From NCBI RefSeq assembly GCF_033153115.1, contig NW_026889803.1:10044001-10108000 (forward strand): DNA of 64,000 bases, given 5' to 3'. The notes beneath the pieces are model-generated. The model was given only the letters and a program-made list of their open reading frames with translations. It searched no databases and was not told the origin of the DNA. Origin of the DNA: Saccostrea echinata (Eukaryota). The translations under genes were made by a program, and so were the position numbers. Of this stretch, positions 50,401 to 53,400 are shown piece after piece (positions within the stretch are counted from its first letter, which is position 1; each line of letters opens with the position of its first letter).

Positions 50401-53400
50401 AAAAGATATTCAACTGCATTGATGCCCTGCCAAACTATGTAAATGTGTTTCATGAAATTTTCATGAATATAAGCATAGTTATCCATGATTCATTATTCTG
50501 AAATGAATACCTTGGCAAAAGTTGATCCCTTTCCTTCAGATTCGATCTGGATAACCTGAGTACGACGCTGGAGGATTTGGTCAATGTCCTCTTCGCAGAA
50601 TTCATCCCCAGCCTTATCATCATCCATCAGAGCTCCATAAGCTCCTTTACGTAACAGCTCCTCAATTTCCTTCTTAGACATCTGAGCTTGCTATAAAATA
50701 GGACAAGATGTGTTCATGAAACTTTTCAGCTCATACTCCAACTAATCTTACTTAACGCCCTTTGGGTACCTAATTGATTTGAATCTCCATTATCCATGAA
50801 TGGTATCTATAAAGTGTAGTATTGTTAATTATATTTGACTATCAAATTTAATAATTCTAATGAATTTTGAAATTTCAAATAAATCTGTATCCAGAATTAG
50901 TTTTAAAGAATCGGCATCAATAGGTTAAATTAATTTGATACAAGAAACTCAAGTATTAAGAAATCAACTGAAATAAAAGGCTTTTATTTTATCAAAATCC
51001 AAATACTTGTACATGTACTTTAGAGCCTAAGTACATGAATTCAACTTTAAAATAAGGGATTTTAAAAGCATGTTTGCCATCAGTTTCACCAAAGTCAACA
51101 CCCATTTAGCTTTTGAGCTAATGTCTGAGTTGGCTTGAGATTTCATCATTTGTTTGAAAATTTCCATCTCCCCCCAACTTCCTTTGTCCCCCAACTTACA
51201 GGTGCTGCTTTATCTGAACCCATGGACTGCAAGACAGCTTTGTCCAGACCCAGCTTCAGAGAAGCCTTGTCAAACATTTCTCGCTCATATGAGTTTCTTG
51301 TCACAAGACGGTAAACTTTGACCTCTTTTGTTTGTCCTATTCTGTGACAACGGGCTTGAGCCTATGAAAAACAATATGTAAATCAATAAAATCATTTACA
51401 TAATCTAAATGCTGAAGGTTTCAGATTTACAAGAATTGCAAGTCCTGAACCACAGGTACATGTACATCTTCATATATTATTTTGTAAGGTTTGTGACTTT
51501 GGACATTCCAAAGCTTACCTGGAGATCATTCTGAGGATTCCAGTCCGAGTCGTATATAATGACTGTGTCAGCAGCTGTAAGATTTATTCCCAAACCACCA
51601 GCTCTGGTACACAATAGGAAGACAAACCGATCCGACTCAGGCTTAGAGAACCTGTCTATGGCCTCTTGTCGCAGCTTTCCACAAATCCTTCCATCAAGAC
51701 GCTCAAACAAGTACCTGATGACAAGCAAATACACAATCAACATTCTGCTATTTTATTTTGATAGAGAAATCCTTCATACAAGTATACCAGTAGACTTACA
51801 TGAAGCATAGGTAACAAATGTTACTAAAGACATAAATTGTAGAATCTGCATCAGTTTCACCATGATCATCAAACATGCAACAAATTCAATGCATGTATGA
51901 GTTGGCTTGAAATTGTCATCATCTACAGAGATATTCAATTAAGTAAAGCTGGAAGAAAAGACATACTGCTTATGTATGAGATAATCCTCCAAGATGTCTA
52001 AAACTCGAATCATCTGAGAGAAGATCAAGACTTTGTGTCCTCCCTGCTTCAGTTTGGGGAGAAGTTTGTCAAGTAGCACCATTTTACCACATGACTGCAC
52101 CATGGTATGGAACACAGATTCAGCATCATTTCCTTTGGTTTCTTTGCTCTCACTCAAAATCTTGTCTTCAGCACCTAGTCAATAAGGAAAAAAAAAACCC
52201 ATAACAATGTTTAATCTATGTCATGTAAGTGCACATTTACTTGGAGATGAACTACAAGCATCCAAACTTATACACACCCTTGTACATATACACATATGTA
52301 CTTATAAAATCTAACTGTCATATCGATATCCTCTGACAATAAATCACACTGCCTTTGCTTACCTTTGATAAGATAGGGGTGATTGCAACATTTTCGCAAC
52401 TCCATCATGGTATTAAGCAGATTTGGTACATTAGCCGATGAACCTGTGCCTTTAGACAAAAATGTGAAGTTGCGTTCCAAAATGGCTCGATAATATTTCT
52501 TCTGAATGTTCGTCAATTCAACCTATATAAATCAAACAGCTTTCATTATAATTTATGTACATTATATATTTCTTTCAAAGAAAAAACTTTTTCCGAAACA
52601 CAATGCCCACCTGACCTCTAAACTTTTTATCTGACTTGACCTAAATAATGTCTGTATCTTTTATACCTTAACACTTTAAAAGCTAACAGACAGGGAGGAA
52701 CAATAAAATCCATCACAGAGTGAGAAGTGTCTTTCATACTTTAAACCATAAGTTGTTTACTCTAAATCTGTCATACATGTATTTGTCATGAATCAGAAAA
52801 ATTTTAATTTTCAGCAAAGATGTATTTGAAATGAAAAGAAAATGTCTACTTTTACTGTATGAATGAATTCTTTACCTCCACTATGGTTTCTTCTTTGGCA
52901 GCTAGATTCTTTTCCACATCTTCTTTCAATCTTCTCAACATCATTGGCTTTAAGATCTGTAAATTTCCCCATATTTATTTTCTAAAACTTTTAATATTTA
53001 CATGTACATAATTGGTATGATATAAAGATTACAATATTTATGATACAGTATTTTGTTGGATAGACTTACAGCTTTTAACTTCTCCACTTGAGCATCTGTC
53101 TTAAGATCCCCAAATTCTGCCATGAAGGCTTGGGTTGACTTGAATCTCTCTGGTTCCAGAAAGCTGAGTAAACTGTGCAGCTCCTCAGTGTTATTCTGTA
53201 AAGGTGTTCCTGACAGAAGGACATGGTGTTCCTGCAATCAATAAAGAGGATAATTAACAAGAAGATAATGCTGAAGATACCTATAATAGACAAGTACTTG
53301 TACTTCAGGATAGCCTGTGTGAGAATAATACACTGTGATTAGTCATTAGTAACAATAGGGCGACATCTAGCAAAATCAGCAGTACCATCTACTGTACTAA

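What the first reader, a model, noticed from the sequence alone, without database searches (positions are those of the whole stretch)
51075..51928. Two paralogous orphan C/D snoRNAs in CHD introns 14 and 16
Seen: two ~80-nt sense-strand segments share only the C box, the 11-nt TCAAGCCAACT before D', and TGGTGAAA-CTGA. The sequence between D' and C' differs, yet forms a hairpin in both. That pattern suggests duplicated snoRNAs under selection rather than a transposon. The predicted target is 5'-GUUGGCUUGA-3', methylated on the second G. I cannot place it perfectly in any rRNA or snRNA from memory; the nearest are gapped matches to 28S GUUGAGCUUGA and tRNA-Ser GUUGGACUUGAAAU. This may be an undescribed family, which would make the gene a multi-snoRNA host.
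Basis: partly seen in the sequence, partly recalled or inferred. Interest (0 to 1): 0.78.

Follow-up and report, generated by a model that had tools for sequence, protein, structure and literature searches.

The report
Two intronic guides for 28S methylation
Two small guide RNAs in introns of a chromatin-remodeller gene are not orphans: they match this animal's own large ribosomal RNA at a methylation site already known in humans and plants, so they are ordinary in function but sit in an unusual host gene.

Summary
Two box C/D snoRNA-like elements lie on the minus strand, the sense strand of a CHD-type helicase gene, at about 51078-51152 and 51846-51930. They sit in introns two apart. They share exact 13-nt and 14-nt blocks and are the only two copies in the 923-Mb genome.

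The "orphan" reading does not hold. The shared antisense core CAAGCCAAC pairs perfectly (9 bp) with this genome's own 28S rRNA at LSU 3261-3269. With D' = CAGA/CAUA, the fifth-nucleotide rule selects G3264, which lies 4 nt 5' of the E. coli U2552 equivalent. That position corresponds to human 28S Gm4494 (older numbering G4464) and Arabidopsis Gm2918.

- **Known guides:** In vertebrates this site is guided by SNORD69 in GNL3 introns.
- **Compensatory change:** The Rfam SNORD69 consensus carries the same antisense element with U where these carry G. This animal's 28S has C (54 of 54 rDNA copies) where the eukaryotic consensus has A.
- **Differences from SNORD69:** The element sits before D' rather than D, the host gene differs, and the Rfam model does not match.
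- **Second spacer:** It pairs with the sequence just 5' of the target, probably as accessory pairing.

No small-RNA expression data were available. The same gene also hosts a U6-A53-type guide, which the scan noted before on this window.

The parts
51078..51152 (-). cand1, a box C/D snoRNA-like element. C box 51149-51143; antisense core CAAGCCAAC 51137-51129; D' CAGA 51127-51124; hairpin 51122-51104; C' UGUUGA 51100-51095; second spacer CUUUGGUGAAA 51094-51084; D CUGA 51083-51080. No clear terminal stem.
51846..51930 (-). cand2, a box C/D snoRNA-like element. Terminal stem 51928-51924 / 51850-51846; C box 51922-51916; antisense core 51909-51901; D' CAUA 51899-51896; hairpin 51895-51873; C' UGAUGA 51871-51866; second spacer UCAUGGUGAAA 51865-51855; D CUGA 51854-51851.
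50691..51199 (-). Host intron of cand1 (509 nt). It is retained in one transcript contig of run X1.
   Evidence: joint 50690>51200; X1 piece 50510-51360
51715..51966 (-). Host intron of cand2 (252 nt).
   Evidence: joint 51711>51964 with cut +3; splice sites read
51519..51714 (-). Helicase C-terminal exon of the host gene, lying between the two snoRNA introns. Together with exon 51200-51361 it separates them.
   Evidence: (PF00271 on all listed hits)
48063..48164 (-). Third snoRNA of the same host gene, a U6-A53-type guide in the 347-nt intron 47975-48321. It is a separate finding of this scan and is listed here as context for the multi-snoRNA-host claim.
   Evidence: U6 sequence

Best explanation
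Both elements are intron-encoded box C/D snoRNAs. They would be released from the spliced introns of a CHD-type (CHD6-9/kismet-like) helicase pre-mRNA and assembled with the fibrillarin methyltransferase complex.

The spacer between the C box and D' carries the antisense element CAAGCCAAC. It pairs with 28S rRNA LSU 3261-3269 in the stem and first loop letters of the A-loop hairpin. One unpaired U separates the duplex from D' (CAGA in cand1, CAUA in cand2). The nucleotide opposite the fifth position upstream of D' is therefore G3264, which would be 2'-O-methylated. This is the counterpart of human Gm4494 (old numbering G4464, guide SNORD69) and Arabidopsis Gm2918 (guide snoR34).

The second spacer (UGGUGAA, directly before the D box) pairs with LSU 3251-3257, three letters 5' of the first duplex. 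The pairing is 9 bp in cand1 and 7 bp in cand2. It most likely acts as accessory ('extra') base-pairing that helps a short 9-bp guide duplex, not as a second methylation guide.

What is shown: sequence anatomy, copy number, intron position and strand, perfect complementarity to the genome's own 28S, position mapping to the known site, and the guide/target compensatory difference against the SNORD69 and LSU consensus sequences.

What is inferred: expression and processing, snoRNP assembly, actual methylation of G3264, and the role of the second spacer.
For: - **Architecture:** C box, D box, D'/C' and the D'-C' hairpin are present in both copies. Conservation between the copies is confined to the boxes and the two spacers.
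- **Copy number:** There are only two copies in 923 Mb.
- **Position:** Both lie in sense orientation in introns confirmed by transcript contigs. The three snoRNA-bearing introns (347, 509 and 252 nt) are the longest of the 13 introns laid. The other ten are 109-204 nt.
- **Complementarity:** CAAGCCAAC has exactly one perfect complement in the 9.9-kb rDNA unit, at LSU 3261. That sequence is identical in 54 of 54 rDNA copies matched.
- **Site mapping:** An ungapped alignment with E. coli 23S puts LSU U3268 opposite U2552. Published tables equate E. coli Um2552 with human Um4498 and Arabidopsis Um2922, and list Gm4494 / Gm2918 four letters upstream.
- **Known guides:** SNORD69 is given as the guide of G4494/G4464.
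- **Same antisense element:** The Rfam SNORD69 consensus reads UUCAAUCCAACC followed by CUGA. That is the same 9-nt element in the same register (one letter before the box), with U where these elements have G.
- **Compensatory pair:** The Rfam eukaryotic LSU consensus has A where this 28S has C. The difference therefore keeps the base pair.
- **Accessory pairing has precedent:** Extra pairing located in the second guide region is documented, and HBII-210 is named among the human snoRNAs that have it (PMC3116282 section 8). HBII-210 is the GNL3-hosted guide of this G in chicken.
- **Internal control:** The U6-type guide in the same gene also uses CAGA as its D' and obeys the same fifth-nucleotide rule on the genome's own U6.
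Against: - **No expression evidence.** The runs found are transcript contigs that show only spliced exons and one retained intron.
- **Rfam gives nothing useful.** There are 0 matches at gathering scores. The weak hits at E up to 10 are generic (snoR38 22.3 bits, snR66 20.9 bits), and SNORD69 is not among the 12 listed.
- **A 9-bp match alone is weak.**
  - Each element has 4 perfect 9-mer complements somewhere in the rDNA unit.
  - 1 of 30 shuffled 11-mers reached the observed duplex energy. For the 13-mer, 7 of 30 did.
  - The case rests on the register and on the coincidence with a known site.
- **A second shared 9-mer exists.** AGCCAACUC matches LSU 1916-1924.
- **The boxes are imperfect.** D' is CAUA in cand2 and C' is UGUUGA in cand1. 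cand1 has no evident terminal stem and lies 387 nt from its 3' splice site.
- **My first target scan missed the site.** At 11 nt with at most 1 mismatch it found nothing, because both flanking U's are unpaired.
Confidence: 0.8

Rival explanations
1. True orphan C/D snoRNAs. The conserved spacers would act on a non-rRNA target such as a tRNA, an mRNA or another small RNA, and the 28S match would be coincidence.
For: - The guide duplex is only 9 bp, and perfect 9-mers against rDNA are common by chance.
- U2 nt 150-160 pairs with the 11-mer with 1 mismatch and 2 G-U pairs.
- The cand1 second spacer pairs over 11 bp (2 of them G-U) with U5 loop I.
Against: - The 28S match sits in the exact guide register and selects a known conserved Nm site. 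It reproduces the SNORD69 antisense element with a compensatory change.
- The full 12-mer target is not enriched in the genome: 85 matches against 143 for the reversed control.
  - None of the 30 flanks examined (of the 85) is a tRNA.
- No D'-spacer target at 1 mismatch or fewer was found in U1, U4, U5, U6, U11, U12, U4atac, U6atac or U3.
- The U5 pairing shrinks to 8 bp in cand2 and would select an A.
Confidence: 0.07
2. Non-functional look-alikes: a duplicated intronic segment that happens to keep C/D-like motifs and is not processed into stable RNA.
For: - There is no expression evidence.
- D' and C' are imperfect, and cand1 has no terminal stem.
- No Rfam family reaches its threshold.
Against: - Flanks and inter-box sequence have diverged while the boxes and both spacers stay identical (p about 0.005).
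- The antisense letter matches the species-specific C of the 28S.
- No other C/D-like guide for this site was found.
- Divergent C'/D' motifs are reported to be active (abstract of PMC3116282).
Confidence: 0.08
3. The pair guides methylation elsewhere in 28S, in the expansion-segment insert at LSU 1916-1924, through the shared 9-mer AGCCAACUC.
For: It is a perfect 9-bp complement shared by both copies. It gives the best duplex energy for the 13-mer, -16.3 kcal/mol.
Against: - This pairing runs into the first letter of the D' box, so no box stands in register.
- The target lies in an 18-nt insertion absent from the eukaryotic LSU model, so it is not a conserved site.
- 7 of 30 shuffled 13-mers pair as well somewhere.
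Confidence: 0.03

Closest known systems
SNORD69 (HBII-210), vertebrate box C/D snoRNA, Rfam RF00574
   Same: It has the same predicted target nucleotide: human 28S G4494/G4464 corresponds to LSU G3264 here. It carries the same 9-nt antisense element in the same register, one unpaired letter before the box. The single difference (U against G) matches the A-to-C difference in the rRNA. It is intronic, and it is reported to have extra base-pairing.
   Different: - In SNORD69 the antisense element precedes the D box; here it precedes D'.
- Its host is GNL3, not a CHD gene.
- The Rfam model does not match these elements at E up to 10.
- Homology is therefore unproven. The pair may be analogues.
SNORD19 / SNORD69 family in GNL3
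   Same: Two paralogous guides sit in different introns of one host gene. Both are able to target this 28S G (PMC6984369 passages).
   Different: SNORD19 also guides 18S-G683. The 18S of this genome has no comparable match to the antisense element.
Plant snoR34 (At1gCDbox13.1)
   Same: It guides Arabidopsis 25S Gm2918, the same site (table in PMC8583080).
   Different: I did not see its sequence, so no comparison was made.
SNORD8/SNORD9 (mgU6-53), hosted in human CHD8
   Same: Intronic C/D snoRNAs hosted in a CHD6-9-type gene. A U6-A53-type guide is present in this same gene at 48063-48164.
   Different: The two elements studied here have no complementarity to U6.

Membership tests
Box C/D snoRNA (class) | C box RUGAUGA near the 5' end and D box CUGA near the 3' end | tested here: met
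   AUGAUGA and CUGA are present in both copies, 59 and 61 nt apart.
Box C/D snoRNA (class) | Short terminal stem bringing C and D together | tested here: inconclusive
   cand2 has a 5-6 bp stem directly flanking the boxes. cand1 has none adjacent, only a possible distant external pairing.
Box C/D snoRNA (class) | Antisense element ending next to D or D', placing a target nucleotide opposite the fifth position | tested here: met
   The 9-bp duplex with LSU 3261-3269 selects G3264, a known Nm position in human and Arabidopsis.
Box C/D snoRNA (class) | Stable RNA bound by fibrillarin, Nop56, Nop58 and Snu13 | not testable with these tools
   Only transcript contigs without small-RNA information were available.
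SNORD69 (Rfam RF00574) | Score at or above the family's gathering score (37 bits) | tested here: not met
   SNORD69 is not among the 12 matches at E up to 10 over 50900-52100, and there are 0 matches at gathering over the window. Genome-wide the model finds only an unrelated 31.1-bit site.
SNORD69 (Rfam RF00574) | Antisense element to the G four letters 5' of the A-loop Um | tested here: met
   
SNORD69 (Rfam RF00574) | Antisense element upstream of box D; host gene GNL3 | tested here: not met
   Here the element is upstream of D', in a CHD-type gene. The only GN3L_Grn1 domain match is on another contig.
snoU6-53 (SNORD8/9) | Antisense element to U6 around A53 | tested here: not met
   Neither spacer pairs with the genome's U6. 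The U6 guide of this gene is a different element at 48063-48164.
Orphan snoRNA | No rRNA or snRNA target in guide register | tested here: not met
   A target in guide register exists in the genome's own 28S.

The most novel reading that the evidence does not exclude
The pair arose independently of the vertebrate SNORD19/69 lineage. It has a different host gene and carries its antisense element on the D' side, yet it converged on the same antisense element.

It has co-evolved with a lineage-specific A-to-C change at the first loop letter of the 28S A-loop hairpin. Its two spacers together clamp the 3' strand of the preceding helix and the 5' strand of the A-loop stem. A single snoRNP would then hold this part of the peptidyl-transferase centre open during assembly.

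A similar element on a metagenomic eukaryote contig, next to different genes (L057), would mean that this design is spread among other invertebrates and moves between host genes.
Probability: 0.3. Interest if true: 0.45.

Novelty: new member of a known kind. Interest (0 to 1): 0.3.

Why it matters
The result removes a claimed new orphan family. The two RNAs are best read as this animal's guides for a conserved ribose methylation next to the ribosomal A loop.

Three points remain of modest interest:
- **Guide turnover:** The same site has the same antisense element but a different host gene and the opposite half of the snoRNA, compared with vertebrates.
- **Guide/target compensatory pair:** The guide has G against the rRNA's C, where the SNORD69 and LSU consensus sequences have U against A. 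This supports real pairing without any experiment.
- **A three-snoRNA host:** One chromatin-remodeller gene carries one spliceosomal U6 guide and two rRNA guides.

The case also shows that 'orphan' calls should be tested against the species' own rRNA and not a remembered consensus.

Tried and rejected
**Target searches that led nowhere**
- **First rDNA scan.** An ungapped scan of the rDNA unit with the 11-, 13- and 15-nt spacers at 1 mismatch or fewer found nothing.
  - This was a fault of my criterion. The duplex-energy scan then found the 9-bp core.
- **snRNAs and U3.** U6, U2, U1, U4, U5, U12, U6atac, U4atac, U11 and U3 from this genome gave no D'-spacer target at 1 mismatch or fewer.
  - The exception is U2 nt 150-160, with 1 mismatch and 2 G-U pairs. 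I judged it weak.
- **tRNA ideas (anticodon arm or D loop).**
  - The 12-mer target has 85 genomic matches against 143 for the control.
  - I examined only 30 of the 85 flanks, and no tRNA was called.
  - The other 55 were not fetched.
- **Bipartite 'pocket' guide** of the acetylation-guide type. I considered it because the two spacers flank three unpaired rRNA letters. I dropped it once the fifth-nucleotide rule hit a known Nm site.

**Searches for other copies or relatives**
- Four further TGATGA-spacer-antisense matches in the genome lack D boxes.
- Eight matches to the antisense element followed by a D box have no C box within 95 nt. Seven of them belong to a dispersed repeat.
- The SNORD69 model's only genomic match (L070, 31.1 bits) lacks a D box and the right antisense letters. 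It is not near the GN3L_Grn1 match.
- The metagenome pattern scan gave 4 loci.
  - One is bacterial coding sequence and one is a repeat array.
  - Two are identical eukaryote contigs carrying both motifs beside an HSP90 gene.
  - Those two have no CHD exons, a poor D'/C' and only 14.3 bits to the pair's profile, and they were pre-selected by the pattern. I treat them as a possible relative only.
- One exon searched against the protein collection gave 2274 hits.

**Other limits**
- PDB and Pfam confirm only an SNF2/CHD-type helicase.
No call here supports it.
- I did not verify the taxon.
- A literature search for snoRNAs in molluscs together with SNORD69 listed no paper holding SNORD69 among the 12 shown of 703. 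This does not show absence from print.
The supplementary table and figures of PMC6984369, and Supplementary Figures S5-S7 of PMC3116282 (the extra pairing of HBII-210), may bear on the comparison and were not seen.
Exons and open frames were searched one at a time.

**What I saw of each paper**

| Paper | What was seen |
|---|---|
| PMC6466398 | passages |
| PMC11542601 | passages |
| PMC8583080 | passages |
| PMC12288042 | passages |
| PMC12350172 | passages |
| PMC6984369 | passages |
| PMC2653536 | passages |
| PMC4350525 | passages |
| PMC3116282 | abstract and outline; all of section 8 |
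Full report
**What is there**

Read on the minus strand, the interval holds two elements of about 75-85 nt with the full box C/D layout.
- cand2 (51930-51846) reads: 5' stem CUGUA, C box AUGAUGA, a 16-nt spacer ending UCAAGCCAACU, D' CAUA, a 7-bp hairpin, C' UGAUGA, an 11-nt spacer UCAUGGUGAAA, D CUGA, 3' stem UGCAG.
- cand1 (51152-51078) has the same order, with D' CAGA, C' UGUUGA and the spacer CUUUGGUGAAA. It has no evident terminal stem.

The 13-mer UCAAGCCAACUCA and the 14-mer UGGUGAAACUGAUG each occur twice in the window. 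Expected counts are 0.14 and 0.07, and 0 of 100 shuffles gave two. Between the copies, identity is confined to the boxes and the two spacers. The two longest identical runs are 14 and 13 within 74 columns, and 509 of 100,000 permutations matched that. The flanks are unrelated.

**Not a repeat**

- Each 100-nt element finds only itself in the 923-Mb genome.
- The combined pattern has two matches, with none in the control.
- A sequence profile of the pair finds nothing else below E = 1.
- Four other places with TGATGA, a short spacer and the antisense 10-mer lack the rest of the layout.

**Host gene and introns**

Open frames on the minus strand encode an SNF2/CHD-type helicase. Pfam gives SNF2-rel_dom, and the best PDB relatives are CHD4 and CHD1.

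Transcript contigs of four public runs, from two studies with coded names, give 13 joints with CT..AC ends on the + strand. The gene is therefore on the minus strand.
- cand1 lies in the 509-nt intron 50691-51199.
- cand2 lies in the 252-nt intron 51715-51966.
- Exons 51200-51361 and 51519-51714, and a 157-nt intron, lie between them.

The three introns that hold snoRNA-like elements (347, 509 and 252 nt) are the longest of the 13 laid. The other ten are 109-204 nt.

One contig of run X1 retains the cand1 intron. It differs from the window at six letters and one 3-nt deletion. None of these falls inside cand1, but with only seven differences that is not significant. Contigs cannot show small RNAs, so there is no evidence on expression.

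**The target**

My first ungapped scan (11 nt or more, at most 1 mismatch) found nothing in the rDNA unit. U6, U2, U1, U4, U5, U11, U12, U4atac, U6atac and U3 gave nothing convincing.

A duplex-energy scan then showed that the core CAAGCCAAC is perfectly complementary to GUUGGCUUG in 28S. This 9-mer occurs once in the 9.9-kb unit, at LSU 3261-3269. The 26-nt stretch around it is identical in all 54 rDNA copies matched.

One unpaired U separates the duplex from D'. The fifth letter upstream of D' (a C) therefore faces G3264.

An ungapped alignment of this 28S segment with E. coli 23S puts LSU U3268 opposite U2552. Tables in PMC11542601 and PMC8583080 equate E. coli Um2552 with human Um4498 and Arabidopsis Um2922. 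They list Gm4494 and Gm2918 four letters upstream, with snoR34 as the Arabidopsis guide. PMC12288042 lists SNORD69 with G4494. PMC6984369 describes SNORD69 as the guide of 28S-G4464 (older numbering), encoded in a GNL3 intron together with its paralogue SNORD19.

The predicted target is thus a known, conserved methylation site.

**Comparison with SNORD69**

The Rfam SNORD69 consensus was printed when the model was run on an unrelated weak hit. It ends in UUCAAUCCAACC followed by the D box. That is the same nine-letter antisense element, again one letter before the box, with U where the two elements here have G.

The Rfam eukaryotic LSU consensus has GGAUUG where this genome has GGCUUG. The guide and target therefore differ from the consensus pair in a compensatory way. 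I take this as the strongest single argument that the pairing is real.

There are three differences from SNORD69:
- The element is on the D' side here and on the D side in SNORD69.
- The host gene differs. The only GN3L_Grn1 domain match in this genome is on another contig.
- The Rfam model does not match the two elements at E up to 10.

Genome-wide, the SNORD69 model finds only a 31.1-bit site that lacks a D box and the right antisense letters. A search for the antisense element followed by a D box finds no snoRNA. These two elements therefore appear to be the only guides for this site in the assembly, within the reach of those searches.

**The second spacer**

UGGUGAA pairs with UUCACCA at LSU 3251-3257, three letters 5' of the first duplex. 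The pairing is 9 bp in cand1 and 7 bp in cand2.

By the structure line of the LSU model, this stretch is the 3' strand of the helix that precedes the A-loop hairpin. If the spacer acted as a guide it would select A3254. That position is not in the tables I saw, which list only sites shared with plants.

van Nues et al. report conserved extra base-pairing next to methylation sites. It is often placed in the second guide region when only one guide is used, and it stimulates methylation up to five-fold. They name HBII-210 among the human examples (PMC3116282 abstract and section 8). HBII-210 is the GNL3-hosted guide of this G in chicken. Both names stand at the human GNL3 locus in PMC4350525. That they are aliases is my recollection.

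I therefore read the second spacer as accessory pairing. This is inference.

**Weak points**

- A perfect 9-mer is not rare. Each element has four somewhere in the rDNA unit, and about three are expected by chance.
- Shuffled guides reach similar duplex energies: 1 of 30 for the 11-mer and 7 of 30 for the 13-mer.
- A second shared 9-mer matches LSU 1916-1924. That pairing would run into the D' box and lies in an 18-nt insertion absent from the LSU model.
- The case rests on four things together: the guide register, the coincidence with a known site, the SNORD69-like element, and the compensatory letter.
- D' of cand2 and C' of cand1 are imperfect, and cand1 lacks a terminal stem.
- There are no expression data.

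**Conservation elsewhere**

The 2274 exon homologues found could therefore not be used.

The one metagenome scan, with a pattern demanding both conserved blocks, gave four loci.
- Two are clear chance matches.
- Two are identical eukaryote contigs with a C-box-like AUGAUGU, both blocks, and a 3' flank like that of cand1.
- Those two have a long first spacer, poor D'/C', other neighbouring genes, and only 14.3 bits to the pair's profile.

I count this as a possible relative and no more.

**Verdict**

The elements are real features and very probably functional box C/D snoRNAs. They are not orphans. They are this animal's guides for the G four letters 5' of the A-loop U, the site guided by SNORD69 in vertebrates and snoR34 in plants.

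They are new members of a known kind, with a different host gene and the guide on the other half of the RNA. The host gene also carries a U6-A53-type guide at 48063-48164. That guide was already noted and followed up in this scan, so the 'multi-snoRNA host' statement stands.

Noticed in passing
window 48063-48164 (-): A U6-A53-type C/D guide lies in the 347-nt intron 47975-48321 of the same gene. Rfam snoU6-53 scores 29.7 bits, E = 0.009, below the gathering score of 36. Its antisense element pairs with the genome's own U6 and uses CAGA as D'. It was already a separate finding of this scan.
   Followed up: partly
window 55304-55370 (-): Weak SNORD52-like match (24.6 bits, E = 0.28) in another intron of the host gene. 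Its C box is poor, and it has only two 9-mer complements to rDNA, neither next to a box. Probably chance.
   Followed up: partly
window 63255-63369 (both strands): A near-perfect long hairpin matches several miRNA-precursor models on both strands (mir-3479, 52.9 and 50 bits, below its gathering score of 79). It looks like a palindromic repeat rather than a specific miRNA.
   Followed up: no
L017 984-992 (-) = 28S LSU 3261-3269; 54 rDNA copies: The first loop letter of the 28S A-loop hairpin is C in all 54 rDNA copies matched. The Rfam eukaryotic LSU consensus has a conserved A there; E. coli also has C.
   Followed up: partly
G000:C29:39326426-39348009, also C159 and C313: U1 and U6 snRNA genes alternate in one tandem repeat of about 2.14 kb, with dozens of copies.
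   Followed up: no
G000:C54:9809769-9809794: A copy of the 28S A-loop region lies on the window's own contig, about 234 kb before the window starts. Whether it is a full rDNA unit or a fragment was not checked.
   Followed up: no
L070 1501-1571 (G000:C85:608283-608353): The only genomic match to the Rfam SNORD69 model (31.1 bits; E = 0.37 genome-wide). It shares the model's terminal-stem letters and C box but lacks a D box and has two wrong antisense letters. No GNL3-like exons lie within 3 kb. It is either a decayed relic or chance.
   Followed up: partly
L057 14482-14580 (-), identical in L055: A metagenomic eukaryote contig next to an HSP90 gene carries an element with AUGAUGU, both conserved blocks of the pair, and a cand1-like 3' flank. 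The antisense element appears twice in tandem, the first copy with an extra letter.
   Followed up: partly
window 51094-51084 (-) against U5 (L058 1542-1552): The second spacer of cand1 can pair over 11 bp (2 of them G-U) with loop I of the genome's U5 snRNA. cand2 manages only 8 bp. I judged it coincidental.
   Followed up: partly
window 50510-51360: One transcript contig of run X1 retains the whole 509-nt cand1 intron, with six substitutions and a 3-nt deletion relative to the window.
   Followed up: no
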